Part shown: piece after piece, positions 28,469-45,393 of the stretch
How positions within the stretch are numbered: the stretch's first letter is position 1
How the letters are laid out: every line of letters begins with the position of its first letter
IMG/VR virus record: IMGVR_UViG_3300009545_000018
Span: 248,001 to 312,000 of that record
Length of the DNA: 64,000 bases
Direction: 5' to 3' (one strand)
Translations under genes and position numbers: made by a program
The notes under the pieces: model-generated
What the model saw: only the letters and a program-made list of their open reading frames with translations
What the model was told of the DNA's origin: nothing
The model's database searches: none

Positions 28469-29196
28469 TTAATACTAATGATATTTTAAAATTAGCTAGC
28501 ACATATGAAGCAGTATGTGATGAATTATTAGCTATAGCCTACATTGTAAAAATGAAGGGCAAATATCGCGTAGTATCTGAAAAAGGTAAAAATTTAGGAG
28601 AATCAGACACTAGGGCAGGTGCTGAAAAAAGATTAAAACAAGTAGAATTTTTTAAACATAAAGATCATAATCAAGCAGATGATAAAGAATTAGATTTAAC
28701 TGATATTGAAGAATTTTCTTATTCCGCTATTGTACGCAAATTAAGACAAAAAGCATCAAAAGAGCAAGTTAAATTGTTTTTAACTTTATATAAAAAACAA
28801 TTTGATAAAGCAGTACGAGACAAAGTACAAAAGCCCGAAAAAATTGCATTACAAAATACCTTTATAAAATTTAAAAAAATAGTTAAACTTAAATATTCTA
28901 AAAAAATGATTAAAAATGCTGCCATTACTGAATTAGGCGATGCTGCTTCTGTTGGAGCCTATTTAGCTAATATTGTTAAATTTACTATTCAAAGAATTTC
29001 CCCCGAAAAAAGACAAGGTGCACTGGAAAGTTTAAAAAATAAACTTTATCATTTAAATGAAATAGAGCTATCTAATAAAAATTTACCAGCCTCAAGTTCT
29101 ATGGGTCAAAGTATAACATTCGTTAAGCATGTCTTATTTAATCATGATGCACAATACATTCGTGAAGTTATAAATAATCTAGTAAGGAATTTATAA
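28465..29196 (+). CDS. Hypothetical head-cluster protein
   Basis: Contains KYRVVSEKGKNLG..AEKRLKQVEFFKH module. Confidence 0.7.
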   Translation: MINTNDILKLASTYEAVCDELLAIAYIVKMKGKYRVVSEKGKNLGESDTRAGAEKRLKQVEFFKHKDHNQADDKELDLTDIEEFSYSAIVRKLRQKASKEQVKLFLTLYKKQFDKAVRDKVQKPEKIALQNTFIKFKKIVKLKYSKKMIKNAAITELGDAASVGAYLANIVKFTIQRISPEKRQGALESLKNKLYHLNEIELSNKNLPASSSMGQSITFVKHVLFNHDAQYIREVINNLVRNL

Positions 29197-29948
29197 TGAT
29201 TTCAAAATTTCTACGAGTTGATGACGGTTTATACCGAGGTTCAGCTCCTAGCCCTAAAGATGTGCAAATGCTGCATGATAAATATGGGATTAAAAAAATT
29301 GTTAGTTTAGATCAAAATTGTGCAGATATAATTGCTAATACTTGTAAATTATTTAAAATTAAACAGGTTATAATAGATTTGAATGAATCTAAGTCCTCTT
29401 TATTAAATTTATTAAAATATGATTTATACGATCTTTTAATAAATGGGGGTCCAACATTTGTGCATTGTCGTCATGGCAAAGATAGAACAGGATTAATTTG
29501 TGCAATGTATCAATGTAAATATCAAGGTAAAGATCCAGAACAAGCAATTGCAGAGGCAAAAAGTTTGGGATTTGGTATTGGAGTAGATCCTTCATTTATT
29601 AATTTATATGAAAAGTTAATAAGATCATGCAAAACACCTACTGATATAAATAATTCGGATATAGTTTCTAATGTTAGAGAAGATAAAGGTGATAGTCGTG
29701 ATTCTTACTTAGATGAGGCAGATAGATTTTCTATTGAAGCTTATTTAGGAAAAAATCTTATGGATCAAGATGATCCGGTTTATAGCACTATAAATCATCA
29801 ATCACCTACAAGACAGGATAATGATAGGTTAATAAAAGAGCATATTTTAGAGGAAGATTATATGCCTCAAGTAGGGCAATATGACAATAGTGCGGGTATT
29901 GCTGGTGTTGGACCTAGTGAAAATGTAGGTGGATTTATACATGATTAA
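29196..29948 (+). CDS. Cys-dependent (PTP/dual-specificity family) phosphatase with acidic tail
   Basis: LYRGSAP, FVHCRHGKDRTG (CX5R). Confidence 0.9.
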   Translation: MISKFLRVDDGLYRGSAPSPKDVQMLHDKYGIKKIVSLDQNCADIIANTCKLFKIKQVIIDLNESKSSLLNLLKYDLYDLLINGGPTFVHCRHGKDRTGLICAMYQCKYQGKDPEQAIAEAKSLGFGIGVDPSFINLYEKLIRSCKTPTDINNSDIVSNVREDKGDSRDSYLDEADRFSIEAYLGKNLMDQDDPVYSTINHQSPTRQDNDRLIKEHILEEDYMPQVGQYDNSAGIAGVGPSENVGGFIHD

Positions 29949-30719: not shown

Positions 30720-30881
30720 ATGGCTTTTATAAAGCATGGTGATGGAAAAATAATGTCTGTTGTAGAAACAGAAAATCTTACTGAAGAGCAAAAAGAAACA
30801 GCTAAGAAAATTTCTGCTAACAATAGTAATAAATCTATAGAATCCAACGAAACTGATAACCAGGACGCTGGGAGAAATTAA
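30720..30881 (+). CDS. Small protein coupled to the protease gene
   Basis: MAFIKHGDG; TAATG overlap with 30881. Confidence 0.5.
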   Translation: MAFIKHGDGKIMSVVETENLTEEQKETAKKISANNSNKSIESNETDNQDAGRN

Positions 30882-33800
30882 TGTTTATAAAACTTGGTGA
30901 GTTAATAGAGATTAGTAGGATTGAAAATTCAGAATCCTGTATTCCTGCAGTAAGTGAACATATATTAAATGAATTTAAAAAATTTGCCACTAATTTAAAG
31001 AAAATCGCTCCTAAAGCTGAGGATTTTTTGTATTTCTCTGCTGTTATGATGCATGCAGCTGAAGCTGCCGGTATTAATGATGATGGTACTCCAAGATTAA
31101 CAGTTGCAGGAGAACCGGTTCAAGTAGGTTGGAATAAATCTGGTGGTACTTGGCGTTGGACAAGTAATGATCCTAATGTTAAGCCCTATAGAAATTCAAA
31201 TGGGGATATTTTTCCAGAAGAAGAATTAGTAAAGGCATATAAAAAGTGGGTAGGAAAACCTCTTTGCGTAGATCATAAATCAAGTTCAGTAGATCACGTA
31301 AGAGGTTTTATTGTTGATACCTATTATGATCGTAATTTAAAAAGAGTTATTGCTTTGTGTGCTTTAGATAAGGCAGGTTATCCACAATTAGCTAGACAGG
31401 TTTCTACGGGAGTATCTAACTGTGTATCTATGGGTACCGCAGTAGGTAGGGCAATTTGTAGTGATTGTGCCACTGTAGCCAGAACAGAACAAGATTTTTG
31501 TGATCATATGAGAAGAAAAACTTCTTATGGTGAAATTAACGTTGATCTAAATCCAATTGAACTATCAATTGTTGTAAATGGTGCTGATCCAAAAGCTAAT
31601 ATTAAAACCATTATTGCTGCAGCTAATACTTTAAATTCATATGTCGAAAGTAAAGCTAATGAATTAAAAAAGTTAACTGATAGACATTTTGTTGGAAAAA
31701 TTACAGTTAGTGATGGTGGCGGCGTTAATAATAAAGTTTCAGAGATTACTATTGATTCATCAGATTTAAATAAATTTAAGATTGATATGGAAGAAGCTTT
31801 TCAAAAATTACAAGAGATTAATGCTTCTGTAAATAATTCTGGAAAAGATACTAATGATCTTGCATTTAATCAATCGTCGGGATCTATTGCGATGGAAAAT
31901 TCCGCAACTCCCACAACAGATTCAGGATTGGCTCCACCTCACGAAAGATATGCTTCTGCTAACTTAGAAACAGAATCTATTAAAGAACTTCGTGAAGTTA
32001 CAAAAGTAATTGAACAAAAGTTGAGTCAAATGAAAGTAAGCATAGATAAGTTAGCAAATTCAAACACACAAGAGGAAAATATGTCAGGATCAGAGCTTAA
32101 TAAAAAAGGTTATTTTCAAGGAACTGAAGAGCCTAAACCAGGTCAAGTTCAATATCCAAAGGATCCAACCAATGAAAAGGTACGTGATTCTGAAGATAAA
32201 CACATGTTAGATCATGATGTAGGTCCAGTTGATGGATTACATCCAGGAGATTTAGAGCGCAAAAAAATGTTAGCTCGTGCAGAAGCTGAGGAAAGAGCTA
32301 TGCGTAGATCTGCTGTTGTTGATCTTGCTAAAAAGGCTTTAAAAAGTAAAGAAGCTTATTTCCAAGGCGGTGGTGGAGTAAACGAACCAACCCCAGGAAA
32401 AGTAAAATATCCTGCTGAAAAATTAAATGATCAGCTACGTGATCATGAAGATAAACAAATGGTAGGACAAAAACCATTTCCAGGTGTCGGATCAGTTGAT
32501 GGACTTCATCCAAGCCCCGATTCAGCAGATGTTGCTGACGAAAAGAAACGCAAAGAATTATTGCAAAGAGCTTCATTAAGAGCCAGATTCGTTAAAGCTG
32601 CTAATAATGATGGAACTCAAAATGTAGGCAAGAGTGCTTGGGAAGTGTTCTTAGGTGATAAATTACTATTAACTGCCTCAGTAAATGATTTATCTGGTAA
32701 TCGTGCAGAAATAATGTATGATAGTATTGCTACCAAAGAATTCGGTGCTAAATTAATTGAAAAAGTTAAAGTACAAGGCGCTGATAAAGTAAGTAGTTTA
32801 ATAAAGAGTGCTCAAGAACTTCCACCAGCAGCTCCTGCAGCTGAACCACCAGCAGCAGCTGATGTTGCTGCTCCTCCAGCTGATGCTGCACCAGCCGCAT
32901 CAGAAGATACGGGAGCTGAAGGTGATCCAAAAGCTAATGTAATGGAACTTTCTGAAAAAGTTAGAGATTTAGGATCTGATTTGGTTGAGGCTGTAAGAGC
33001 CTTAACTGGTGAACAAGCTGAAATGGGTGATTTAGAAGGTGGTATGGGAGCTACAGCATCTGATGTTAACTCTCTAAATACTATTAGAAAAGAACTAAAT
33101 TCAGCTTTAACTGATGCAATGAAAGAAACTGTTGCTGAATTAAATCAACATAAAGAAGAGTTAGATTTGATTGCAAGCTTGTATGATAAGGGAGCTGTTT
33201 CTGCATCCAATGAAACATTGGTAACTTCTGTTACTGATGACGTTATAAATGATGCTAAGAAATCAGTTGCAGAAGGATTTAATTTACTAAGTGCATTTGT
33301 CAAATATGCTCGTGGAACTAAAGCAATTGTCAAGCGCGCGGAATTTGAGGCTGAACTTGATGCATTAGCCGAGGGAGAATCTATGAAGGATGAGCATGAT
33401 AGTCACTCAAGTGACGATTTAATGAGTTTAATCCAAGACACTAATGCTGACTTGGATGCAGTTAAAGACATGATGGATGAAGGTTGTGATGGTGAATCTG
33501 AAGTATCTGATGCTGTTGATTCATTATCTGATGAAGTGGATGATAACAATTTAGATGCTAAACCAGAAGAGTTAAAAAATCTAGAAGTTAAGCCAGGAAC
33601 CGAAGTTCATGTTGTTGCTTCTACAGATTATGATAGCAAAGAAGGTCGTACAGCTCTACGTGCTAAGTTAGCTGCTGATGCTCTAAAAATTAGTCCATTA
33701 CTACATGATGCTCATCCAAAGGGTGGATTTACAACTGAGTTAGATGTTAAACCAGAAGGTGATTTAGCAAAAGTTGAAGATTTAGAAGAAGTTCATGATG

Positions 33801-34342
33801 CTATGATGGATGTTGCTCAAGCTCCACCAAAAGTACGTAAAGAAGCTGAAGCTATTAATAAATTAGTTTCAGAAGGTAAACTTGATGTTACTGATCTAGA
33901 TGCATTAGTTGCTGAAGGATTAGATAAAGATGCAGTTTCTTATTATAAGAAATTCTATAGTCAAGTTGATGGTGGATCTGAATTTGCTAATGAACTTGTA
34001 AAAGAACATGCAAAAGCTGAATTAGAAGAACAACTAAATACCTTCAAAGTTAAAATGGCAAGAGCTTATGAATTAACTTACGATATGGTTTCTCGTGGAT
34101 TGTGTCATGATGACAGAGTATCCATTTCAACTCAAGTTGAAGAGATCATGAAGTTTAATGATGAATCTTTTGACTCACTAAAGAGAGTTGTTGCAAAGCA
34201 TTCTCCAACTGTTAAAGTTGCCGGTCGTATGCCACAAGTTGGTATGATTGGTTCTGGTGAAATTAATTCCGCAGAATCTGATGGTGACTTATTTAGTCAA
34301 TTATCCTCTGCATTATCAACCTCTAAGAAGAGAAACTTTTAA
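30881..34342 (+). CDS. Prohead protease (HK97/assemblin fold, Zn insert) fused to long scaffold region
   Basis: NSNGDIF, GKPLCVDH, VSMG, CSDC..CDH, ELSIV..GADPKA; about 900-aa acidic coiled-coil C-terminus. Confidence 0.85.
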   Translation: MFIKLGELIEISRIENSESCIPAVSEHILNEFKKFATNLKKIAPKAEDFLYFSAVMMHAAEAAGINDDGTPRLTVAGEPVQVGWNKSGGTWRWTSNDPNVKPYRNSNGDIFPEEELVKAYKKWVGKPLCVDHKSSSVDHVRGFIVDTYYDRNLKRVIALCALDKAGYPQLARQVSTGVSNCVSMGTAVGRAICSDCATVARTEQDFCDHMRRKTSYGEINVDLNPIELSIVVNGADPKANIKTIIAAANTLNSYVESKANELKKLTDRHFVGKITVSDGGGVNNKVSEITIDSSDLNKFKIDMEEAFQKLQEINASVNNSGKDTNDLAFNQSSGSIAMENSATPTTDSGLAPPHERYASANLETESIKELREVTKVIEQKLSQMKVSIDKLANSNTQEENMSGSELNKKGYFQGTEEPKPGQVQYPKDPTNEKVRDSEDKHMLDHDVGPVDGLHPGDLERKKMLARAEAEERAMRRSAVVDLAKKALKSKEAYFQGGGGVNEPTPGKVKYPAEKLNDQLRDHEDKQMVGQKPFPGVGSVDGLHPSPDSADVADEKKRKELLQRASLRARFVKAANNDGTQNVGKSAWEVFLGDKLLLTASVNDLSGNRAEIMYDSIATKEFGAKLIEKVKVQGADKVSSLIKSAQELPPAAPAAEPPAAADVAAPPADAAPAASEDTGAEGDPKANVMELSEKVRDLGSDLVEAVRALTGEQAEMGDLEGGMGATASDVNSLNTIRKELNSALTDAMKETVAELNQHKEELDLIASLYDKGAVSASNETLVTSVTDDVINDAKKSVAEGFNLLSAFVKYARGTKAIVKRAEFEAELDALAEGESMKDEHDSHSSDDLMSLIQDTNADLDAVKDMMDEGCDGESEVSDAVDSLSDEVDDNNLDAKPEELKNLEVKPGTEVHVVASTDYDSKEGRTALRAKLAADALKISPLLHDAHPKGGFTTELDVKPEGDLAKVEDLEEVHDAMMDVAQAPPKVRKEAEAINKLVSEGKLDVTDLDALVAEGLDKDAVSYYKKFYSQVDGGSEFANELVKEHAKAELEEQLNTFKVKMARAYELTYDMVSRGLCHDDRVSISTQVEEIMKFNDESFDSLKRVVAKHSPTVKVAGRMPQVGMIGSGEINSAESDGDLFSQLSSALSTSKKRNF

Positions 34343-34355
34343 TTAACGGGGAAAT

Positions 34356-34982
34356 ATGAAAAATCAAAGTGTATCAGATTTCGTTGCTTCTGCTATGGAT
34401 ACTGTATTGAAGAGTGAATCTCACAATGCATTGTTTGGAACTCATTATAAAACTGCTTCAGATGAATTATTAGCTTCTGATCATAAAAAAGAAGATGAAG
34501 ATTATTCAATGGCAGATGATAATGATGCCAAGAAAAAGAAAAAAGAAGAAAAAGATTCTGAAGAAGAATCATCTTCTAGCGATTCTTCTAGTGACTCTTC
34601 TAGTGCTGATGATAATTTTGCAGAAAATTTAGAAACTTCAGCTTTTGATGTAGCAATTGATAGTTTATTAACAGCTTCTGCTGCTTTAGATAATATCGGT
34701 ATGGAAAAAACTGCTACCTTAAGTTTAAAACTTGCCTCTTTAGTTGTTGAAGCTAAGAAGAAAGACAAGGATAAAGATAAGGAAAAAGAAAAAGCTGCTA
34801 AAGAAAAGGAAAAGGCTGCCAAAGAAAAAGCCAAGGAAAAAGCCGCTAAAGATGCTCAATCAGCAAAAGACAAAGCTGCTAAAGATAAAGCTAAGGAAAA
34901 AGCTGCTAAAGAAAAAGAAAAAGAGAAAGCTGCCAAAGAGAAGGCTAAAGAAAAAGCCACAAAAGAAAAATCTAAGAAGTAA
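34356..34982 (+). CDS. Low-complexity protein with KEKAA-repeat C-terminus
   Basis: KEKEKAAKEKEKAAKEKAKEKAAK... Confidence 0.7.
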   Translation: MKNQSVSDFVASAMDTVLKSESHNALFGTHYKTASDELLASDHKKEDEDYSMADDNDAKKKKKEEKDSEEESSSSDSSSDSSSADDNFAENLETSAFDVAIDSLLTASAALDNIGMEKTATLSLKLASLVVEAKKKDKDKDKEKEKAAKEKEKAAKEKAKEKAAKDAQSAKDKAAKDKAKEKAAKEKEKEKAAKEKAKEKATKEKSKK

Positions 34983-35000
34983 TTCTTATAAGAGGTAATT

Positions 35001-35222
35001 ATGTTTAAAATCGGCAGTCATGCAGATGATATTGTTAGTGAAATGGAAAAAGAGCTAAAAGCTCATCATGTTGAAAACACATATGGATTCAATAAACTAG
35101 CTAAGGCTGCCGATTATTTAAACTCTGCTGCTTCAATTTTTGAAGATGCTAATATGCCAGAAGTTTCTGATAAAATTACTGAAATATTAAAAAATTTGGC
35201 AACTGAATTAAATTCAAAATGA
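35001..35222 (+). CDS. Small helical protein, paralogue of 35219
   Basis: AADYLNSAASIFED. Confidence 0.7.
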   Translation: MFKIGSHADDIVSEMEKELKAHHVENTYGFNKLAKAADYLNSAASIFEDANMPEVSDKITEILKNLATELNSK

Positions 35223-35623
35223 ATAAAAAAGTGTTTGAAAATGAAATTTTAACCAATATGGATATGCTCTTGCAACCATCATTGGTTAAAGTTGCTTCTG
35301 CATCTAATGATTTAGGGCAGGCAGTTGAATATTTAAATTCAGCAGCTGAAATTTTTGAAGATTTAGGTTTCACTAAAAAATCAGAAGAAATTTTGCAACT
35401 TTTAGAATCTTTAGCAAATAAATCAAAAAATCCATTAAATATATCAGATTCACATACTAAAGGATTAACACCAGATAAACAAATAAAAAATTTGTTAGAT
35501 CATGGTACGCAATTTAATATGGCGGATGATGGTAATGCATTATTAGAATTAGATGTTAATGATGCTGATTTAGAAGTGTTAGAAAAAGAACTTTCTGATA
35601 TGGATTTTGAAGACGAATTATAA
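35219..35623 (+). CDS. Small helical protein, paralogue of 35001
   Basis: AVEYLNSAAEIFED. Confidence 0.7.
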   Translation: MNKKVFENEILTNMDMLLQPSLVKVASASNDLGQAVEYLNSAAEIFEDLGFTKKSEEILQLLESLANKSKNPLNISDSHTKGLTPDKQIKNLLDHGTQFNMADDGNALLELDVNDADLEVLEKELSDMDFEDEL

Positions 35624-35719
35624 TTATTTTTATTTAATAGACTGGAAAGTGTAATTTATACAATGTTATATCTAACTAAGACAACATAGTAGTGTTGTGT
35701 TATAACAAAGGAAAATACT

Positions 35720-36409
35720 ATTCTTAGACTTATACAAACCGGAAATTCGTTACCTGTATCTTTTATATGTGATCCATCAGCTGAGTTTCAGCCAGGAATG
35801 GTAGCAGAGTTAGTAGTTATTGGTAATCAGGTAATGGCAACAGTTAGTAATGGAACTGCTCCAATTGGAATTATTGATGACATTAGAACAAAAGCCTTTA
35901 CAAATGTTTCTTGGAATGAAGTAATTGTAGTTCCGGCAGCAGGCGTCGTTGGTCCGGGGGGAGTTATAGTTACTCCTGTTGATGTAAAAGCAGAATTAAA
36001 GAAGCCTAATATTATTGCAAATACATTTACTTCAACCGTAGATGTTGCATTAAATGCAACTAATGGCGTAATAACATTTGTAGCAGGAACTCCTTTAAAT
36101 TTCGACTTAACAGGAACAGGAAGTCCTAATGCTATTAGAACAATTGTAAATTATACATATTATGTAGCTAATATTCCAGGAGATGATAGTACTTCTGGTA
36201 GTGGTAGAATTACTGTGTGGTTTCAGAGAATGTTTTTTCAAACAGATCAATATGAAACTAATCAGCAATATCCGGTTAGAGCTAATTTGTTTGTGAGTGA
36301 AACTGGATTTCTAACTACTAGAAAACCAAGTGAATTTCATCCGGCTGTTGCAATGGTAACTGCCCCACCAACACCGATGAATCCTATGATCGAGGCGATG
36401 TATTACTGA
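35720..36409 (+). CDS. Putative capsid decoration-type protein (likely ATT start at 35720)
   Basis: TSGSGRITVW shared with 42779; frame open 26 codons upstream of ATG 35798 to an ATT preceded by AAGGA. Confidence 0.6.
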   Translation: MLRLIQTGNSLPVSFICDPSAEFQPGMVAELVVIGNQVMATVSNGTAPIGIIDDIRTKAFTNVSWNEVIVVPAAGVVGPGGVIVTPVDVKAELKKPNIIANTFTSTVDVALNATNGVITFVAGTPLNFDLTGTGSPNAIRTIVNYTYYVANIPGDDSTSGSGRITVWFQRMFFQTDQYETNQQYPVRANLFVSETGFLTTRKPSEFHPAVAMVTAPPTPMNPMIEAMYY

Positions 36410-36517
36410 AAAATAGTAAGATAATAATCACGAATACTTTACTGCATATCTTTTTATTTATAATAAGCTTTCTATAATCTTGCATTATTATAGACAAAAT
36501 CACTGTTTGAGGCACAT

Positions 36518-37618
36518 ATGACTTTTAAGCACGTTAAATTTGAAGATTCAGCAACAATGCGCTCTTTAATTAAAGTAGCCTATGCAAAGGGACTAATTAA
36601 AGACGATCCAACATTAATTAAGAATTCCTCTTTAGAAAAAAAAGCAGATTATTCTCCAAGTTTTAATTTAATGGAGAATATTATTAAGCTTTGTGCAGGT
36701 CTTAGAGAACAGGGCATGGAAAAATATGCCAATGATTTAGAGTCCAAATTTATGGAATATAAAAAGGCAAACTCTTTATATGAAACTTCTAAAGAAACTG
36801 GAGAGGATATTGTAGATCAAGCACATCCACAAGGCTCACATAAAGTTTCTGATGTAGATGGAGATGCTATAGTAGAAACTATTTTAGATCAACATTTAAA
36901 AATTGTTAATGTTGTTAATAAAAAACCAACTGGTAAATTGTCAAGTAACACAGATATTTTAAAAGCTGTTAAGAAAGTTGTTGCCCAACAATTATCAATT
37001 AATGATTATTTACAAAAAATGAAAAATAGTGCTAAAGCCGTTAATCAAGGCTTTCATAGCGCTTCAGTATTAACTAGACCAATAACTTTTGTTACAGGTG
37101 AATTATTAGATGCTGTTAATGATTTAAATAAAGACAATATTAGTTTTGAAACATTAAATAATATTTATTTACTGATAACAAACACAAGAAAAGAATTAGA
37201 GCCCAAATTAGGTGGTCTCACTGGATTAGAAGAAGATAAGTGGAGATTTATTGAACCACATTTGAATGAAATTCAGAATGGTGTTTATAAAATTCAAGAA
37301 CTAATAAAAAATCCTCCCAAGAAAGAAGAGCCTACAGTTAATCCTATAATCGATGCATTTAATAAGCAAATTAATATAGTATTATCTACGCTTGCCACTT
37401 GGTCCAATATTGTTCAAACTGATCCTAGCTCTACTTCCGAAGAAAAGGCAGCAGGCAATAAATGGATTAATGATAAAAAAATTAGTATTATGAATTTGAA
37501 AACAAGATTTGATGCTTTAGATGATGCTTCAAAACTTGAAGCCCTAGATGGACAAAAACGTCGTTTACAAGAAATCACGGCAGAATTTCCTGAATTTAAA
37601 AAAACTTGGATAGACTAA
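36518..37618 (+). CDS. Hypothetical inner-head candidate
   Basis: AHP module; KxA motifs. Confidence 0.7.
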   Translation: MTFKHVKFEDSATMRSLIKVAYAKGLIKDDPTLIKNSSLEKKADYSPSFNLMENIIKLCAGLREQGMEKYANDLESKFMEYKKANSLYETSKETGEDIVDQAHPQGSHKVSDVDGDAIVETILDQHLKIVNVVNKKPTGKLSSNTDILKAVKKVVAQQLSINDYLQKMKNSAKAVNQGFHSASVLTRPITFVTGELLDAVNDLNKDNISFETLNNIYLLITNTRKELEPKLGGLTGLEEDKWRFIEPHLNEIQNGVYKIQELIKNPPKKEEPTVNPIIDAFNKQINIVLSTLATWSNIVQTDPSSTSEEKAAGNKWINDKKISIMNLKTRFDALDDASKLEALDGQKRRLQEITAEFPEFKKTWID

Positions 37619-38703
37619 TGTCAAATAAAATAAAACTATTAAAAGAAGCAATAGAAAAATTAGCTGAGGTACCAAAGCGTGGACCTAAGCCAATTACAAC
37701 TTCTATTCCATCTAAAGGAATACCAGCTAAACATCCTGGTGGTATTATTCCTAGTTCTCATTTTACTTCAAAAACAATAAATAACCCTACTGTACGAGAA
37801 ATGCAGCTTTCTATGCAAGATTTAGCACAAGCTGTTATGTCTGATTCTCAATCAGCTACTATGTCTTTAAAAAATAAAGACGTATTAAATCCTGGCGCTA
37901 CTGAATCTGTTCAAAAAGCAAAAAAATCTTTTAATGATTTTATTGCAGAACAATATATGGGCGGTTTAGATGAAACAAATAAAGGGGTTGAATGGAATAA
38001 AGATTCTAGTGTTGTAAAATATCCTGATAAACATCAAACACAAACTGATATTTATGAATTAGATGTTGTTATGAATACTTTAAGTAGGATTGGCTCTGAA
38101 AAAAGTGAATTTAAAGCTGATGGTAATTGGGACTGGAGAACAAATAATGCATTGAAAAATATGTTAGGATTTGCTTATGCTCTTTTACAATTAGAAGGCG
38201 ATTTTGGATTAAGTAATACTGTTTATAATATTTCTAATTGGCAAGATTTTAAAAATATTTTATCTAGTTACCGTGTAGAAGGAAATAGTGTTAATTTAGA
38301 TCCTCAAGATAAATCAGATAAGGCAGAAAAAATTACTAAACATTTAAAAGCTATCACTAGATTATATAATAATTTTAGACAACAAGTAATTGCCCGTCCA
38401 GAATACAGACCATTTATTGAAGGTAAGAGACCATTTGATCAATATGATAGTCATGGGTCAAATAAAGATACATTAAATGAAGCTGAGCAACAAATGGCAA
38501 AATCTGATGTTACCAAGGTTGATGGTATTTCTTATATTGCACCTAGATTACCAGACAAAAAATTAAATTATGTTCCATTAAAAGCATTAAGTAGTAAAGA
38601 AGAATATTTGAAATGGATGCTAGATTACGCAGGTGTTCCAAATGAGGAAACTGCTTGGAAGATATTTAACAATATTATTAAACCAAAAATTGAGGCGATG
38701 TAA
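37618..38703 (+). CDS. Protein with degenerate peptidoglycan-binding motif
   Basis: VREMQLSMQDL ... ADGNWDWRTNNALK. Confidence 0.55.
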   Translation: MSNKIKLLKEAIEKLAEVPKRGPKPITTSIPSKGIPAKHPGGIIPSSHFTSKTINNPTVREMQLSMQDLAQAVMSDSQSATMSLKNKDVLNPGATESVQKAKKSFNDFIAEQYMGGLDETNKGVEWNKDSSVVKYPDKHQTQTDIYELDVVMNTLSRIGSEKSEFKADGNWDWRTNNALKNMLGFAYALLQLEGDFGLSNTVYNISNWQDFKNILSSYRVEGNSVNLDPQDKSDKAEKITKHLKAITRLYNNFRQQVIARPEYRPFIEGKRPFDQYDSHGSNKDTLNEAEQQMAKSDVTKVDGISYIAPRLPDKKLNYVPLKALSSKEEYLKWMLDYAGVPNEETAWKIFNNIIKPKIEAM

Positions 38704-40265
38704 TGAGTTTTTTATATGAACAAGAAGTATTAAAATCACTTGCAAACGCCATTACCAAAAGGGCGCAGCAAAATGTACCTATTGGTAACGAAATTCAAGT
38801 TGCAAAAAAATTAGTTGCCAAATTAGCTAAAGAGGTTGGAGGTATACCAGAGTCTCCAAATATTTCGGCAGAAACTCCAACTCCAGTAGGTCTTAATACA
38901 GAAAATTTACAAAATATTGGTAACCTTCTGAAATTTCTTGATGATAATCAAATTAAGGTAGATGGTACTCGTGTAGCTTTTGATCAAGGAGAAAGTGAAA
39001 AATTACCAGAAGGAGAGCAAAATAAACTTTCTCCAATAACAATTAATGTTTCTAGAGATGCTGTTACTAGAAAATGGAATACTGCCGATTATTATGCTAA
39101 TATTCCATCTTTAATTAAATATGTAACATACTTGCAAAATAAAGCCAAACAAGAAGACAATAAAGTACTTGGTGTTTTAATTGGCAAATTAATTGATCAA
39201 GTTAATACTGTTAAACCAGATTCTGGACTATCTAGAAATCCAAAATCAGTTCCTGGAAAAAATGTTAATGAAGTATCTGAAGATACCGTCATTGATTCTT
39301 TTGGTAAAAATTTTGATTCTAAAACTTTATCTGTTGATAATGGTGGTTACGTATTATATGCTAAAGATTTAAAGAATAAAGAATCTTTAAATGCTTGGAT
39401 GATTAGTAATCCAGAAGCTCAAGTAATTACTTATGATAAAGCTGGAAGAAAATCTAGTATTAAATATTCTGATAGTCAAGTTGATAAATGTGTTATTATT
39501 AATGTTCTTTATAAGCGCGCTATTAATTTATCTAATAACTCCCAATCCGCTAAAGATACAGAAAAATATTCATTTTATGTTAAAAAAATACAAGAAATTG
39601 GATCTACTATTACGGGACCTAATGGACAAACCTGCAGTATTGGAGCTGAATATATTAGTAAACCAATTAGTAATAGTGGTGATACTGAATTAGCAGGATA
39701 TCATACAAATAAAGAGCAAACGGGTCCAAATGGTAGTGGTAGCAGCGGAACTAATGTTACTGCTCAAATTGGTCGTATTATTTCTGAATTACCATTATCT
39801 ATTGAAGATATTAATTTGGATAGAATTTTTAGTTTTACTAGAGAATTAAGTAATTTAATTAGTGGATCTCAAGGTGCTGAAGCGGCTGATCGTAATAATA
39901 GGATTATGGGATATATAAATGATTTAGGTCAAAAAATGGTTGCATTAAAAGGATTAACTAAACATAATGCGGCTATTTTCCCAACAAACATTTCAGCTCC
40001 AGAATTTGCTAGTATGTTAAAAAATCCTGCAAATTATCTTCCCACATTAGAAGGGTTAGCAACTATAGTTAATTTAGTTAGAATGATTGTTGCTGAATTT
40101 TATAGCGCATATAGAACACAAATTTCTGGCATGAGCGACCAATATAAACAATTATTACGTGGACAAATTGGAACTAATAGAGATGATAGTTCTATTTATT
40201 CTAGAAATATCGAAGATATTAATTATCTGAGAAATAAATATAATCAAGTTTTAAGAGTAAAATAA
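38703..40265 (+). CDS. Hypothetical inner-head candidate
   Basis: 520 aa; ITKRAQQ near N-terminus; TAATG coupling. Confidence 0.7.
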   Translation: MSFLYEQEVLKSLANAITKRAQQNVPIGNEIQVAKKLVAKLAKEVGGIPESPNISAETPTPVGLNTENLQNIGNLLKFLDDNQIKVDGTRVAFDQGESEKLPEGEQNKLSPITINVSRDAVTRKWNTADYYANIPSLIKYVTYLQNKAKQEDNKVLGVLIGKLIDQVNTVKPDSGLSRNPKSVPGKNVNEVSEDTVIDSFGKNFDSKTLSVDNGGYVLYAKDLKNKESLNAWMISNPEAQVITYDKAGRKSSIKYSDSQVDKCVIINVLYKRAINLSNNSQSAKDTEKYSFYVKKIQEIGSTITGPNGQTCSIGAEYISKPISNSGDTELAGYHTNKEQTGPNGSGSSGTNVTAQIGRIISELPLSIEDINLDRIFSFTRELSNLISGSQGAEAADRNNRIMGYINDLGQKMVALKGLTKHNAAIFPTNISAPEFASMLKNPANYLPTLEGLATIVNLVRMIVAEFYSAYRTQISGMSDQYKQLLRGQIGTNRDDSSIYSRNIEDINYLRNKYNQVLRVK

Positions 40266-41377
40266 TGTCAAGTAACAGTGAAATTAGATTTTATACAGAT
40301 GCAATGATAGTTGAAACATTATTATCAGATATTGAAATTTATAAAAAAGCTGATGCTGGAACAATATCTCAACTTACTGATTCTGTTAAAAATTATGTTT
40401 CAAATCATATTGATCCAGAAGATCGTACTGGTAGTGTTCTTAATATGTTGGCGCCAGGTGCCATTTCTATGATGTTTAAAGCTATGGGTTTTGGCAAAAT
40501 AGGTTTATTGTTTGGTTTGGCAGCAAGTGTATTCCATATTGATGTTACTGGAATTTTATCATCTATTTATGATGAAATTAAATCTTTATTATCAAGTGGT
40601 AAACAAATAACTTCTTCACAAATTGATGGTTTAGTAAATTCTGCTGTTCAATCTCGCGGCGGAGGAGAAGCTGATTTATCACAAATTCAAACAGCTTCTA
40701 TACAAGAACAATTAAAAGATGTTAAATTTTTAAAAATATCTTTAATATCTTATGATAAAGATATTGTTAATATTGAAAAAAGTGCAGACTTTACAATAAC
40801 CTCTTCAAGAAAAGATAAGACACTCAATATTTTAGGAAGAGTATTAAGCTGGGTCTTTAAAATTGTTCTGTCGAGTGGTGGATTTATGGTTGCGGGCGAT
40901 GCAGTTAATAAATTTTTGGGTAGACCCAATGCTTTTGATGGAAGTATTAAAAATAATAAACCAGTAGAAAATACTGTAATAGAATCCATTCCAAGTAGCA
41001 CTCAACATAAATTTCCTCTTAAAGAAGGATTTATAGATACTAGATATAATATTGGAAATAATAATTGGATTGAAAAAATAAATAATAGTAAGTCTAATAT
41101 TGAAAATATGATAATTGGATTTGCAAAAGAAATTTATAATGGTTTAAATGGTCAAGAGTCTGTTATTAGAAATTCTTCTAAATTTCAAGATATTGTAGAA
41201 GAAATTACTTGGTATAATCATACTGTTGCGGGCGATCCAATTGTTTTTATACCAAAGAAATTTATTTCTAAAAAACAATTAGTAGATAATTTTATTGATG
41301 AAGTGGCGGCAAATTCAAACATTAAACCATCAAATAATTTACAAACAAACCTGCCACAAGGTGCTTATTTAACATAA
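40265..41377 (+). CDS. Protein with Gly-rich hydrophobic helices (ejection-protein candidate)
   Basis: MMFKAMGFGKIGLLFGLAASVFHI; ILGRVLSWVFKIVLSSGGFMVAG. Confidence 0.6.
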   Translation: MSSNSEIRFYTDAMIVETLLSDIEIYKKADAGTISQLTDSVKNYVSNHIDPEDRTGSVLNMLAPGAISMMFKAMGFGKIGLLFGLAASVFHIDVTGILSSIYDEIKSLLSSGKQITSSQIDGLVNSAVQSRGGGEADLSQIQTASIQEQLKDVKFLKISLISYDKDIVNIEKSADFTITSSRKDKTLNILGRVLSWVFKIVLSSGGFMVAGDAVNKFLGRPNAFDGSIKNNKPVENTVIESIPSSTQHKFPLKEGFIDTRYNIGNNNWIEKINNSKSNIENMIIGFAKEIYNGLNGQESVIRNSSKFQDIVEEITWYNHTVAGDPIVFIPKKFISKKQLVDNFIDEVAANSNIKPSNNLQTNLPQGAYLT

Positions 41378-41427
41378 TAGCGCATATAAAGACATCTATT
41401 TGTCAACTATCTTAATGGTGAAAATTA

Positions 41428-42660
41428 ATGAGAAAATCAGATATATTTGAAAGTTTTGTCAAAATAGCCGAAGAAAAGGGATTAATCTCTAAGGATGCGC
41501 CAGATAAAGCTAAAGCTGCCTTGGAAAAAAATCCTAGAATGTCAGCATTAACTGCTGATGACATTACAAAATTATATCATGTTAAACCTGATGCTCCTAA
41601 AGGCATGGAATATGATAAAAATATTATGGAAATTGCTCATCCAAATTCAGTTGTAGTGTCACCATCATATGATAAATTAAATGGATTAGTTGAAAACAAT
41701 ATAGAAAGACAAAATATATTACTTCATATTGTTAATAAACCAACTGATGGATTAAGCATTAATCGCAAATATGCCGAAAAAGATTTAGTATTATCTTTAG
41801 TTAGTTTAGGTAATCATTTAGACAATGTCAATAAAGAAAATTTAAGAATATTAGCAGATACTTGTTTAACACAAGTTGCTGAAAAAACTATTGAAAAAAA
41901 GGCTTTAGCTCCATTGGCTTGGGCAGTTTTAGTGGGAGTTCCATCTTTAATTGGAGCTATTTATGCTCAACAACATCTTCCAAATATTGATCATGGATTT
42001 AGAGAAAATCATATCAAATTAATATCTGAATTAGATGATTTACTAAATTCTAATTCAAATTTTGGTGTTGGCTCTACTTATACAAAATCATTTATAGATA
42101 GTGTTTCTGATTTTAAAAATAAATTAGAAGAATTTTATTCTTTATATTATAAGAACCAAGATATAATTACTAAATTAGAAACTCCAAAAACTGCTAAAGA
42201 TCTAATTCAATTAGCATCAGAACCATCAGGTTCAAATGCGGTTCAGGCATATAATGAATTAGTAAAATCATTTGCAAACATCTTACCACTTATTAATGGT
42301 ATGGAACGTAATTTTAAATCTGAAAGTTTTAAATCTAGGCAAGTAGAAGATAAGGGATTTATTACATCTTTGATTGATAAAACTGAAATATTACATGGAC
42401 CTAATGGATTAATTGCAGATGATTTTCAAGATGTAGTTAATGCAATTCCTCCCTATAAAAAATCTGTACAAGAAATATTAAAAGTTTTTGCTGAAGCTCA
42501 AAATTTACAACATAAAGCCAAAGAAGATTTAGAAAGTGCTGCCACTGAATCTTCACAATTTATAGAGCCTTCTAAGTCAGTTACAGAAGTTGATAATGAG
42601 GCAGATGGCTTAGGTAAAGACCTAGAAGATCTGGGAAAAGAATTTCCAAATATTATATAA
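41428..42660 (+). CDS. Protein with AHP module and one hydrophobic helix
   Basis: IAHPNS; IEKKA-LAPLAWAVLVGVPSLIGAIYA. Confidence 0.65.
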   Translation: MRKSDIFESFVKIAEEKGLISKDAPDKAKAALEKNPRMSALTADDITKLYHVKPDAPKGMEYDKNIMEIAHPNSVVVSPSYDKLNGLVENNIERQNILLHIVNKPTDGLSINRKYAEKDLVLSLVSLGNHLDNVNKENLRILADTCLTQVAEKTIEKKALAPLAWAVLVGVPSLIGAIYAQQHLPNIDHGFRENHIKLISELDDLLNSNSNFGVGSTYTKSFIDSVSDFKNKLEEFYSLYYKNQDIITKLETPKTAKDLIQLASEPSGSNAVQAYNELVKSFANILPLINGMERNFKSESFKSRQVEDKGFITSLIDKTEILHGPNGLIADDFQDVVNAIPPYKKSVQEILKVFAEAQNLQHKAKEDLESAATESSQFIEPSKSVTEVDNEADGLGKDLEDLGKEFPNII

Positions 42661-43560: not shown

Positions 43561-44262
43561 TTATTTTGATAGCTTTTTTAATTCCCAGACAAATTGGTAT
43601 GTTTCGCCATAATTTCTTTTTTTTAAATTAAATCTAATTTCTGGTGAAACATGATCATATCCATTATTAAATTCTGTATTTTCTAATACATTTTGTAGAT
43701 TTATTTCGTTTACAATCTGTAATCCACATTTTTCAATCATTTCTTTTAAAGAAAAATAAGTAAAAAATTTAATATGGGTTTTATCTAATAAACCAGTTTC
43801 CCTATAAGTGAATTTATTATTCCATAAGTCGATTAAGATTGCATTATGAGCTACATTTGGAATGGAAATCCAAATACTACCATTTTCTTTTAATAATGAT
43901 TTGCTTTTATTTAAAATTTCTTCTGGATTATGCAAATGTTCTAGTACATCAGCAAATATAATATAATCTAAATTATTTATTCCACAATTATAAACATGTG
44001 TAAAAAAATCATCTCTTTCTAAATCTCCCCAATATTTTCCATAAAATGATCTATCTGCCCATTGAGAGGCTTGTTTTCCAGCTTTTTCATTATGTTCAAC
44101 AATATAAACAGTACAATTTAAAGTTTCTTTTAAATATTTTGTCATTCTTCCATGAGCACATCCACATTCTAAAACAGAAGAATTAGGGATAATATTCTTT
44201 AATATTGTTGAATTAGAGTTTTCTGACCCCATATCTAACGTAAAATCGTACTGTGTTTCCAT
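43561..44262 (-). CDS. Class I SAM-dependent methyltransferase
   Basis: VLECGCAHG, DYIIFADVLEHL, SIPNVAH, GLLDKTHIKFFT. Confidence 0.9.
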   Translation of the reverse strand: METQYDFTLDMGSENSNSTILKNIIPNSSVLECGCAHGRMTKYLKETLNCTVYIVEHNEKAGKQASQWADRSFYGKYWGDLERDDFFTHVYNCGINNLDYIIFADVLEHLHNPEEILNKSKSLLKENGSIWISIPNVAHNAILIDLWNNKFTYRETGLLDKTHIKFFTYFSLKEMIEKCGLQIVNEINLQNVLENTEFNNGYDHVSPEIRFNLKKRNYGETYQFVWELKKLSK

Positions 44263-44382: not shown

Positions 44383-45393
44383 ATGAATATGTTTAACAGC
44401 AAAGGCGAAATGAACGCCAGCTCTTTGAAAGATGCTTTAACTCAATTAGTTAAGTATGCTTCTATCCTAGAAGAGAATATGCCAGCTAACGCAGGTTTAG
44501 CCGGTCAACCATCAGTTTCTGATGACAAGCGTGATGAATTAATCTCTCGTGCCATTATGACACAAGATGGTAAAGTTGCTTTAGCTCAAGCTATGGCAAA
44601 CCCAATTCGTAAGAACTTAGATTACCACGGTATTGCTCGTAGAGCCTTAGTAGTTGATCCATTGCCACAAGGTGCAAATCCAACTTACGAACGCGATATT
44701 GACGTTGCTGCCGTAGTTATCTCTTCTAACGGAACTGGTCCAGAGTCTCGCGTATTCGGTGACCGTATCGTAGTTCCAGAATTCGAAATCTTTGCTAACC
44801 CAACTGTACGTATTGCTGAGGTTAAGAGACGTAGATTCAACGTAATTGACCGTGCTGTTCAAAAAGCTCGTCAAGAAATCATGGCACAAGAAGATGCTAA
44901 CATCTTTGCTGCCTTAGATGCCGCTGCTTCTGTTGAAAATACTATAACAGACGTTGCTGATGCTGGTCTTCTAAAGAGAGACTTAGTTGAAATTAAGCAA
45001 CAAATTGATCGTTGGGACTTGGTAACTACCAAGTACTTCATGAACATCTCTGAGTTCACTGATATCTTGAAGTGGGGTTCAGGTGGTGGTCAAGGTACTT
45101 CTGGTGGAGACTTCGATCCAGTAACAATGCGTGAAGTATTGCAAACTGGCTTGTATGCTCATATCTGGGGAACTGATATTATGGTATCTAAGATTGTCCC
45201 ACCTGGCACGATCTATGGTGCGGCCGATCCGGAGTTCGTAGGCGTCATGCCAATTCGTCAAGACATTGAAGTCTTGCCAGCTGATGAACCAAAACAACTT
45301 AAATTAGGTTGGGTTGTTTCTGAGATAATAGGATTGGCTATAGTTAACCCACGTAGTGTTGCAGCAGGTCGTAAGTCAACTACTGTCGCTTAA
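44383..45393 (+). CDS. Major capsid protein (HK97 fold)
   Basis: 336 aa after protease/decoration genes; strong codon bias; PIRKNLDY, PEFEIFANP, QEDANIF, GLAIVNPR; strong RBS and terminator. Confidence 0.85.
   Translation: MNMFNSKGEMNASSLKDALTQLVKYASILEENMPANAGLAGQPSVSDDKRDELISRAIMTQDGKVALAQAMANPIRKNLDYHGIARRALVVDPLPQGANPTYERDIDVAAVVISSNGTGPESRVFGDRIVVPEFEIFANPTVRIAEVKRRRFNVIDRAVQKARQEIMAQEDANIFAALDAAASVENTITDVADAGLLKRDLVEIKQQIDRWDLVTTKYFMNISEFTDILKWGSGGGQGTSGGDFDPVTMREVLQTGLYAHIWGTDIMVSKIVPPGTIYGAADPEFVGVMPIRQDIEVLPADEPKQLKLGWVVSEIIGLAIVNPRSVAAGRKSTTVA

What the first reader, a model, noticed from the sequence alone, without database searches (positions are those of the whole stretch)
33700..41760. 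AHP module shared by the scaffold and two unrelated-looking proteins
Seen: scaffold LHDAHPKGG..DLAKVEDLEEVHDAMMDVAQAPP (33710); 36518 VDQAHPQGS..DAIVETILDQHLKIVNVVNKKPTG (36821); 41428 MEIAHPNSV..NGLVENNIERQNILLHIVNKPTDG (41635). The pattern is AHP-x(12-18)-VE-x(4)-H/Q...V-x-K/A-x-P, each followed within about 15 residues by a KxA-like site. Inference: a core-assembly module that lets cargo co-polymerise with the scaffold.
Basis: partly seen in the sequence, partly recalled or inferred. Interest (0 to 1): 0.6.

Follow-up and report, generated by a model that had tools for sequence, protein, structure and literature searches.

The report
Shared head-assembly segment in a megaphage
In a 448-kb uncultured phage related to Bacillus phage G, a conserved stretch of about 45 residues ('AHP...VE...H/Q...K/A-x-P') really is shared by the protease-scaffold protein and by the N-terminal regions of two neighbouring head-operon proteins; it probably ties those two proteins to capsid assembly, but what it does was not shown.

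Summary
The three AHP sites are at the stated coordinates: scaffold aa 944, gene A aa 102, gene B aa 70.

Evidence that the similarity is real:
- A (36518-37618) and B (41428-42660) are paralogous over their N-terminal 110-140 residues (hhalign E 7e-9, probability 96%).
Segment against segment gives E 7e-8. The score was 44.3, against a maximum of 27.4 in 250 column shuffles.
- 81 of the 120 nearest scaffold homologues keep AHP. The other 39 read AD[KRH] at that position, yet the 24 loci of that scaffold type still keep AH[P/S] in A and AHP in B.
- B against the scaffold is in register but not significant alone (E 0.057). A is the bridge.
- The 'KxA site' is not a shared feature.

Within the 448-kb genome only these three proteins carry the segment. 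Metagenomes hold at least 1,565 protein clusters with the A/B module, which lies at the N-terminus in 147 of the 150 best. In A the part downstream of the module is hypervariable (15% identity against 59% in the module).

No known family or fold matches. The function is inferred: a prohead incorporation and/or processing element.

The parts
30881..34342 (+). P0001, a 1153-aa prohead protease-scaffold fusion. The protease domain covers about aa 1-260. Two tandem repeats of about 85 aa follow, then a Pro/Ala linker, a helical region, an acidic linker and a conserved C-terminal domain (aa ~920-1153).
   Evidence: phrog_18299 head maturation protease, E 1.6e-14, aa 105-213. tblastn to phage G gp19 at 34% identity, aa 34-236. 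aa 1052-1104 weakly resemble phage G gp21 (E 0.0014). Family alignment.
32093..32605 (+). Two tandem ~85-aa repeats inside the scaffold (aa 405-490 and 490-575), each ending in VDG[LM][HFY]P. They are not part of the shared module.
   Evidence: hhalign of repeat 1 against repeat 2, E 9.1e-46. No profile similarity to the AHP segment or to A/B.
33686..33835 (+). AHP segment of the scaffold (aa 936-985): ..LLHDAHPKGGFTTELDVKPEGDLAKVEDLEEVHDAMMDVAQAPPKV
   Evidence: AHP is kept in 81 of 120 homologues and [VIF]E in 119 of 120. It aligns with A aa 94-137 at E 1.7e-4 to 7.2e-8. Shuffle control.
36518..37618 (+). Gene A (P0002, 366 aa): a conserved N-terminal module followed by a hypervariable helical C-terminal part.
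   Evidence: aa 1-157 are 59% identical to 17 homologues and aa 158-366 are 15% identical. No Pfam, PHROG, PDB or BFVD match except its own family.
36518..36988 (+). N-terminal module of A (aa 1-157): MTFKHVKF, helix 12-23, helical hairpin 51-88, AHP segment, helices 122-134 and 144-155.
   Evidence: AlphaFold2 with 135 sequences: pLDDT 73.5 and pTM 0.31, so not globular. Invariant over 135 sequences: M1, Y88, A102, H103.
36767..36937 (+). AHP segment of A (aa 84-140): ..SLYETSKETGEDIVDQAHPQGSHKVSDVDGDAIVETILDQHLKIVNVVNKKPTGK
41428..42660 (+). Gene B (P0003, 410 aa): an N-terminal module, a hydrophobic stretch and a conserved C-terminal part.
   Evidence: 351 homologues; the 120 best listed are 353-462 aa long, and all but three (odd automatic names) are unnamed or 'hypothetical'. 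aa 1-113 are 60% identical and aa 114-410 are 39% identical.
41428..41766 (+). N-terminal module of B (aa 1-113), homologous to A aa 3-144 but without A's helical hairpin.
   Evidence: hhalign E 7.1e-9, probability 95.8%. Merged alignment.
41575..41751 (+). AHP segment of B (aa 50-108): ..YHVKPDAPKGMEYDKNIMEIAHPNSVVVSPSYDKLNGLVENNIERQNILLHIVNKPTDG
   Evidence: A segment against B segment, E 1.8e-6. B segment against scaffold segment is in register at E 0.057.
41905..41961 (+). Hydrophobic, transmembrane-like stretch of B (aa 160-178, LAPLAWAVLVGVPSLIGAI).
   Evidence: Kyte-Doolittle mean 2.0 over 19 residues. A hydrophobic stretch is present at this position across the aligned B homologues.
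44383..45393 (+). Major capsid protein (336 aa), marking the end of the head-gene block that holds A and B.
   Evidence: phrog_2522 major head protein, E 1.3e-79. 54% identical to the phage G major head protein.

Best explanation
Shown: a segment of about 45-55 residues is shared by three proteins of the head-morphogenesis block. The segment is an AHP box, a linker of 14-18 residues, an invariant [VI]E that opens an amphipathic helix with H or Q six residues later, and then K/A-x-P. The three proteins are the C-terminal domain of the protease-scaffold fusion and the N-terminal regions of A and B. A and B are also paralogous over a further N-terminal helix. The module is the best conserved part of A and B. 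A's downstream part is hypervariable, and B's contains a transmembrane-like stretch.

Inferred: the N-terminal module of A and B is a prohead-incorporation region. It uses a piece of scaffold-type sequence to enter the scaffold-filled procapsid, either by docking on the scaffold lattice or on the partner that this scaffold segment contacts. It is then probably trimmed by the fused prohead protease. That would make it a long counterpart of the T4 capsid-targeting sequence and of the 111-254-residue N-terminal propeptides of giant-phage head proteins.

On this reading the helix after [VI]E is the docking part, because it is conserved in every scaffold. The AHP box is a second function, recognition or processing, that A and B cannot lose. 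The scaffold can lose it because it is anchored in the core in other ways.
For: Real similarity.

Head context:
- Terminase (21962), portal (23885), protease-scaffold (30881) and major capsid protein (44383) are on one strand. The genes from A to 40265 overlap or abut one another.
- The same gene order occurs in 24 IMG/VR loci and in a close relative.

Exclusive to three proteins per genome: a combined segment HMM finds nothing else among 2,599 ORFs; the next hit in the window's own genome has E 4.7.

N-terminal position: in 147 of the 150 best of 1,565 metagenomic clusters the match starts at residue 1 or 2; protein lengths are 186-693 aa.

Conserved tag with a divergent body: 59% against 15% identity in A.

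The module is non-globular and flexible in AlphaFold2 (pTM 0.31), as expected of a region that folds on a partner or is cut.

Precedents:
- The T4 capsid-targeting sequence is a conserved N-terminal tag on divergent internal proteins and is removed by gp21 (PMC9026906).
- SPN3US head proteins, including the paralogues gp53 and gp54, have N-terminal propeptides of 111-254 residues (PMC10052503).
- From my own knowledge of that paper (I did not open its text here): SaPI1 CpmB and the 80alpha scaffold share a capsid-binding C-terminal motif (PMC5644958).
Against: - No evidence that A or B is in any virion. There is no homologue in 50,697 GenBank phages, including phage G.
- No cleavage site can be read from sequence.
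- 39 of 120 scaffolds lack AHP and the H/Q, yet the 24 loci with that scaffold type keep AH[P/S] in A and AHP in B. The AHP box therefore does not act by matching the scaffold's own copy.
- In the scaffold the segment is internal, about 170-210 aa from the C-terminus, not at the end that usually touches the capsid protein.
- B against the scaffold is not significant on its own.
- B's hydrophobic stretch could mean a membrane protein unrelated to the virion.
Confidence: 0.45

Rival explanations
1. The segment is mainly a substrate cassette for the fused prohead protease. The protease recognises the AHP box and cuts nearby, most plausibly after the invariant Glu of [VI]E, by analogy with the Glu-specific T4, phiKZ and SPN3US prohead proteases. 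Cutting would free the scaffold's C-terminal domain from the rest of the scaffold and remove N-terminal propeptides of about 120 residues (A) and 89 residues (B). On this reading the segment processes the proteins and does not target them.
For: - [VIF]E is kept in 119 of 120 scaffolds in both subclades and is nearly invariant in A and B.
- Residues before it fit small-x-hydrophobic-E: AVxE in A, GLVE in B, AKVE in the scaffold. A similar [AS]ILE lies in the conserved N-terminal extension of the capsid protein.
- A scaffold with several cut sites can lose one, whereas a protein with a single site cannot. This fits the loss of AHP in 39 scaffolds only.
- Giant-phage proteases cut after Glu and remove long N-terminal propeptides (PMC10052503).
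Against: - 45 residues of similarity is far longer than a protease site.
- The small-x-hydrophobic-E pattern is expected by chance about once per 260 residues (my estimate from residue frequencies), so it proves nothing.
- In A, conservation continues about 37 residues past the Glu, to aa 157. That is odd if everything after the cut is free to vary.
- No cleavage data exist for this protease family.
Confidence: 0.3
2. The segment binds a third, very conserved partner directly: the inner face of the major capsid protein or the portal. This would resemble encapsulin cargo-loading peptides or the 80alpha scaffold/CpmB motif. A and B would then compete with, or sit beside, the scaffold on that partner and would not join the scaffold lattice.
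For: - The capsid protein is about 90% identical among relatives, which matches the invariance of AH in A and B.
- Sharing a capsid-binding motif between a scaffold and another internal protein has a precedent (PMC5644958).
Against: - The segment is not terminal in any of the three proteins.
- The scaffold's extreme C-terminus (conserved GRxPQVG...SKRxF) is the more usual candidate for capsid contact.
- No computational or experimental support was obtained.
Confidence: 0.15
3. The scaffold match is a chance or convergent patch. Only A and B are truly related, and the scaffold subclade happened to evolve AHPKG next to an ordinary VE-helix.
For: - Identity is only about 30% over 42-45 columns.
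- Much of the score comes from AHPKG.
- The non-AHP scaffolds score E 0.0073-0.11.
- B against the scaffold gives E 0.057.
- I made many comparisons.
Against: - An unbiased search of the whole scaffold profile puts this segment first at E 1.7e-4, or 5.8e-5 with the A+B profile.
- 0 of 250 shuffles came near the observed score (27.4 maximum against 44.3).
- The non-AHP scaffolds align in the same register and add matches upstream of AHP..S-K-x-K-x-x-D-h-h-D-x-A.
- In all three families the spacing from AHP to [VI]E falls in a narrow 14-18-residue range and H/Q lies exactly six residues after the Glu.
Confidence: 0.08

Closest known systems
T4 capsid targeting sequence (CTS) of internal proteins IPI, IPII and IPIII
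   Same: A conserved N-terminal tag on otherwise divergent proteins encoded with the head genes. In T4 it directs them into the scaffold core and is then cut off by the prohead protease (PMC9026906).
   Different: The T4 CTS is 10 residues and is not reported to resemble the scaffold protein. Here the module is 110-157 residues and contains a 45-residue piece that the scaffold also carries. Targeting and cleavage are untested here.
Long N-terminal propeptides of giant-phage head and ejection proteins (SPN3US gp53/gp54, phiKZ, 201phi2-1)
   Same: Length class (111-254 residues), N-terminal position, presence in paralogous head proteins, and a giant-phage setting with an assemblin-type protease (PMC10052503).
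   Different: No sequence relationship to those propeptides. Their cleavage was shown by mass spectrometry, and none exists here. The phage is related to phage G, not to phiKZ.
80alpha scaffolding protein and SaPI1 CpmB (shared capsid-binding C-terminal motif)
   Same: A short sequence element shared between the scaffold and another internal assembly protein, allowing both to engage the same assembly partner (PMC5644958; this description comes from my own knowledge of that paper, whose text I did not open here).
   Different: There the motif is at the extreme C-terminus and comes from a satellite that hijacks the phage. Here it is internal in the scaffold and N-proximal in two of the phage's own proteins.
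Herpesvirus and phage protease-scaffold fusions (assemblin type), with release and maturation sites
   Same: P0001 is a protease fused to its scaffold. A conserved element at the start of the scaffold's C-terminal domain could be a maturation site.
   Different: No sequence match to any Pfam protease family or PDB chain. The site specificity is unknown.

Membership tests
Capsid-targeting or propeptide tags of internal head proteins (T4 CTS type) | N-terminal position on proteins encoded in the head gene block | tested here: met
   The module match starts at residue 1 or 2 in 147 of the 150 best metagenomic clusters. A and B lie between the scaffold and the capsid gene.
Capsid-targeting or propeptide tags of internal head proteins (T4 CTS type) | Tag conserved while the mature part diverges | tested here: met
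   A: 59% against 15% identity. B: 60% against 39%.
Capsid-targeting or propeptide tags of internal head proteins (T4 CTS type) | The protein is found in proheads or virions, and the tag is sufficient for packaging | not testable with these tools
   No cultured relative carries A or B, and there is no proteomics.
Capsid-targeting or propeptide tags of internal head proteins (T4 CTS type) | Removal by the prohead protease at a defined site | not testable with these tools
   Only a candidate small-x-hydrophobic-E pattern at the invariant Glu, which is common by chance.
Scaffold-mimicking assembly motifs (80alpha SP / CpmB type) | Sequence element shared with the scaffold protein | tested here: met
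   hhalign E 1.7e-4 (whole profiles) to 7.2e-8 (segments). Shuffle control.
Scaffold-mimicking assembly motifs (80alpha SP / CpmB type) | Element at the terminus that contacts the capsid protein | tested here: not met
   Scaffold aa 936-985 of 1153; A aa 84-140; B aa 50-108. None is terminal.
Scaffold-mimicking assembly motifs (80alpha SP / CpmB type) | Demonstrated binding to the capsid protein | not testable with these tools
   No usable result was obtained (see Tried and rejected).
Assemblin-type prohead protease fused to scaffold (for P0001) | N-terminal protease domain related to phage head maturation proteases | tested here: met
   phrog_18299 E 1.6e-14. Phage G gp19 at 34% identity. No Pfam or PDB hit.
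HK97-style Lys-directed cleavage site ('KxA-like site' of the finding) | A KxA motif conserved in register after the segment in all three families | tested here: not met
   KYA is invariant in B and KEA in the scaffold. The A family has no KxA in register.

The most novel reading that the evidence does not exclude
The AHP segment is a portable capsid-loading tag that derives from the scaffold itself. Megaphages related to phage G would use it to load a fast-evolving set of cargo proteins into the head for delivery into the host. The cargo would be the hypervariable C-terminal parts of family A, with at least several hundred sequence clusters, and a membrane-active protein B. This would be a scaffold-derived cargo system in the largest known phage capsids, comparable to encapsulin loading peptides, and could be used to package foreign proteins.
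Probability: 0.2. Interest if true: 0.75.

Novelty: new variant of a known kind. Interest (0 to 1): 0.55.

Why it matters
How giant phages fill their very large heads with specific internal proteins is poorly understood outside T4 and the phiKZ group, and nothing is known for the ~450-500-kb relatives of phage G. A defined, strongly conserved segment shared by the scaffold and two head-operon proteins gives a concrete handle. It can be deleted, mutated (AHP, the invariant Glu) or fused to a reporter in a co-expression system without needing the uncultured phage. If it is a loading tag, the hypervariable bodies of family A become candidates for host-directed ejected proteins. If it is a protease cassette, it would give the first cleavage determinant for this protease family.

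Tried and rejected
1. My interim conclusion that only the window's scaffold has AHP. It rested on 13-18 scaffolds from IMG/VR loci that all belong to the non-AHP subclade. The 120 nearest homologues overturned it.

2. A shorter motif, [VIML][DE]x[ALM]HP, shared with the two scaffold repeats. It occurs 4 times in the genome against 0.43 expected. It was defined after the fact, several A members lack the D/E, the His of the repeats is F or Y in many homologues, and no profile similarity exists. Dropped.

3. A resemblance between the first helix of A/B and the scaffold. A and B point to different places with E of at least 0.03. Dropped.

4. The 'KxA-like site': not conserved in A.

5. Co-folding of the capsid protein with the A module (complex prediction). 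The verdict was 'no answer', which is evidence neither way.

6. Searches that returned nothing useful for A or B:
- Pfam and PHROGs.
- tblastn against 50,697 GenBank phages.
- PDB by sequence, for the scaffold.
- Foldseek against BFVD: only the A family itself.
- Foldseek against PDB.
- VIA-align wide: only a generic helical hairpin, Z at most 6.1.
- ESM Atlas look-alikes, scores below 0.8.

7. All-against-all profile comparison of 15 head-block families. Only A-B stood out (E 6.9e-5), apart from the small paralogues at 35001 and 35219.

8. A literature search for the cleavage specificity of phage G's protease found nothing in the library.

I did not use the reads tools.

Full report
**What the window is.** The window is bases 248001-312000 of a 447,763-bp IMG/VR virus record. 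GC content is about 30%. Its nearest named relative is Bacillus phage G: the major capsid protein is 54% identical and the protease domain 34%. The region of the finding lies in the head-morphogenesis block, all on the + strand:
- large terminase (21962)
- portal (23885)
- an SLT-like protein (27007)
- a 1153-aa protein P0001 (30881-34342), whose aa 105-213 match head maturation proteases (phrog_18299, E 1.6e-14)
- several small or acidic proteins
- a 203-aa conserved protein
- gene A (P0002, 36518-37618)
- three poorly conserved genes that overlap or abut one another (37606, 38703, 40265)
- gene B (P0003, 41428-42660)
- a 223-aa conserved protein
- the major capsid protein (44383-45393; phrog_2522, E 1.3e-79)

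P0001 is a protease-scaffold fusion. Its aa 1052-1104 weakly resemble phage G gp21, the gene that follows the protease in phage G (E 0.0014).

**The observation.** AHP.{12,18}VE occurs three times among 751 ORFs of the genome, only in these proteins, against 0.07 expected from shuffling. Because that pattern was written after seeing the sequences, I relied on profile comparisons.

**A and B are related.**
- BLASTP aligns P0002 11-165 with P0003 4-131 (E 0.007).
- Twenty-four related IMG/VR loci hold the scaffold, A and B in the same order where the contig reaches far enough.
- With 18 and 13 family members, hhalign gives E 0.0011.
- With 145 and 121 members from the large protein collection it gives E 7.1e-9 and probability 95.8% over 112 columns (P0002 3-144, P0003 1-113).
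- The AHP segment alone gives E 1.8e-6.
- Among 105 pairs of 15 head-block families, A-B is the only non-trivial hit.

So the two 'unrelated-looking' proteins are paralogous in their N-terminal regions. They share a first helix (S..MRSLEKVAKEKGL in A, S.IFESFVKIAQEKGL in B), an LY, the AHP segment and K-x-P-x-G. Over 135 sequences the invariant residues are M1, Y88, A102 and H103.

**The scaffold: a correction to my own interim result.** The 13-18 scaffolds from the IMG/VR loci read ..DMLDQADKLADGQTELDVKPSDNLGKVETLPEVNKAMMDLAKAPP, with no AHP. Profile comparisons with A and B were not significant (E 0.12-0.34). I first took the window's AHP for a lineage-specific accident.

The word search with the scaffold's C-terminal 254 residues then returned 466 homologues. 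Of the 120 best, 81 carry AHP at that position, in the conserved context L[HD][DE]AHPKGG[FV]TT[EQ]LDVKPxGDLAKVEDLEExHDAMMDxAxAPPKVRKE. The loci I had sampled all belong to the other subclade (39 of 120). That subclade has AD[KRH] at the position and a ~22-residue insertion just upstream.

With the deeper alignments:
- A against AHP-type scaffolds: E 6.6e-6, probability 85%. A+B against the same: E 2.2e-6.
- A against the full-length scaffold profile (110 sequences, 1,163 columns): the top hit is P0002 94-137 with scaffold 936-983, E 1.7e-4. With the A+B profile it is 5.8e-5.
- Segment against segment: E 7.2e-8, probability 94.6%.
- 250 column shuffles of the scaffold alignment gave best scores of 15.1 +/- 3.2, maximum 27.4. 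The observed score was 44.3.
- Non-AHP scaffolds align in the same register at E 0.0073-0.11 and add matches upstream of AHP.
- B against the scaffold is in register but E 0.057, so A is the link between B and the scaffold.

[VIF]E is kept in 119 of 120 scaffolds. Six residues after the Glu stands H or Q in 77 of 81 AHP-type scaffolds, N in all 39 others, H in 123 of 151 A proteins and Q in 112 of 121 B proteins. The pairing of AHP with H/Q in scaffolds may simply reflect the two clades.

**Distribution.**
- A combined segment HMM finds only these three proteins in the genome; the next hit in that genome has E 4.7.
- The A+B module profile finds 1,565 clusters at 50% identity among 1.84 billion representatives. 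Of these, 403 have E of at most 1e-30.
- In 147 of the 150 best the match starts at residue 1 or 2. Protein lengths are 186-693 aa.
- Two of the exceptions (P0040, P0041) still begin with the module's first helix but have a ~125-residue insertion between it and the rest, so the parts of the module are separable. The third (P0127) carries a 16-residue upstream extension, which may be a mis-called start.
- No listed A homologue has a Pfam domain, all are unnamed or 'hypothetical', and the contigs reach about 500 kb. B homologues are likewise, apart from one Pfam entry and three odd automatic names.
- No GenBank phage has A or B, phage G included.
- A close relative has the same gene sizes in the same order.

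**Structure.**
- AlphaFold2 of whole A: pLDDT 67, with aa 87-157 below 50.
- The module alone with 135 sequences: pLDDT 73.5 but pTM 0.31. It shows helices 12-23, 51-64, 68-88, 96-102, 122-134 and 144-155, with a hint of a small hairpin around 108-119.
- It is therefore a string of elements, not a globular domain.
- Fold searches give only the A family itself or generic helical hairpins.
- A's residues 1-157 are 59% identical to relatives and the rest 15%. For B the figures are 60% and 39%. B has a hydrophobic stretch at aa 160-178.

**How it most likely works.** What is shown is a shared, conserved segment in the scaffold and in the N-terminal modules of two head-operon proteins. Everything about function is inference.

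The best fit is an incorporation region. It would be a long counterpart of the T4 capsid-targeting sequence, a conserved N-terminal tag on divergent internal proteins that is cut off by the prohead protease (PMC9026906). It would also parallel the 111-254-residue N-terminal propeptides of giant-phage head proteins such as the SPN3US paralogues gp53 and gp54 (PMC10052503). The new feature here is that part of the tag is scaffold-type sequence. That recalls the motif shared by the 80alpha scaffold and SaPI1 CpmB (PMC5644958; I cite that paper from my own knowledge of it and did not open its text here).

In the 24 loci whose scaffolds have lost AHP and the H/Q, A still reads AH[P/S] and B still reads AHP. 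So the AHP box cannot work by pairing with the scaffold's own copy. I therefore split the segment in two. The [VI]E helix is conserved everywhere and is the likelier docking part. The AHP box has a second role, recognition or processing, that single-copy carriers cannot lose.

A rival of nearly equal weight is that the whole segment is a protease cassette cut after the invariant Glu. I could not decide between them. The one co-folding job (capsid protein with the A module) gave no answer.

**Comparison with what is known, and novelty.** No curated family covers A, B or the scaffold's C-terminal domain. The kind of thing (targeting tag, propeptide or scaffold mimic) is known. This form, a ~45-residue scaffold-derived piece inside a 110-157-residue N-terminal module in megaphages related to phage G, is a new variant. 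The co-polymerisation reading is plausible and partly supported by context, but unproven.

Noticed in passing
window 29196-29948 (+): A 250-aa ORF in the head block carries an HCxxGKDRTG cysteine-phosphatase signature. Its homologue in a close relative hits Pfam Y_phosphatase2 (PF03162). It may be a virion-associated protein phosphatase.
   Followed up: partly
window 27007-28068 (+): A 353-aa ORF with a lysozyme/transglycosylase-like N-terminal part (PHROG hits; a weak SLT hit in the relative), lying between the portal and the protease-scaffold.
   Followed up: partly
window 43561-44262 (-): A methyltransferase-like gene on the opposite strand sits between the 223-aa conserved head protein and the major capsid gene. 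The close relative has no gene there, so it looks like an insertion.
   Followed up: partly
window 32093-32605 (+), scaffold aa 405-575: Two tandem ~85-aa repeats in the scaffold (hhalign E 9e-46): YFQG..EPxPG..KYP...EDKxM...VDG[LM][HFY]P. They are present in the related scaffolds examined (13-18 from the loci, 110 in the wider set). Their function is unknown.
   Followed up: partly
window 35001-35222 and 35219-35623 (+): Two adjacent small helical proteins (73 and 134 aa) are paralogues that share A..YLN.AA.IFE. No family match.
   Followed up: partly
proteins P0379, P0398, P0421, P0430 (scaffold homologues): Some homologues of the protease-scaffold are 1307-1619 aa long and carry intein/homing-endonuclease Pfam domains (PF05203 in all four; PF14890 and/or PF14528 in P0379, P0398 and P0430). 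These are inteins inside a scaffold gene.
   Followed up: no
window 44383-44500 (+), capsid protein aa 1-40: The major capsid protein has a conserved ~40-residue N-terminal extension (MNMF..G..NASSLKDAL..LVKYA.ILEEN) that is absent from phage G's annotated capsid protein. It may be a propeptide.
   Followed up: partly
proteins P0040, P0041 (family A homologues): A ~125-residue insertion between the first helix (MTFKHVKF...EKGLVK) and the rest of the module, which shows the module is built of separable parts.
   Followed up: partly
window 45450-46496 (-) and 46541-47788 (-): An endonuclease/HTH-like gene and a tRNA nucleotidyltransferase gene on the minus strand, directly after the capsid gene.
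   Followed up: no
window 37606-41377 (+): Three genes between A and B (365, 520 and 370 aa) overlap or abut one another, are poorly conserved among relatives and match no family. They may be further internal head proteins, but they do not carry the module.
   Followed up: partly
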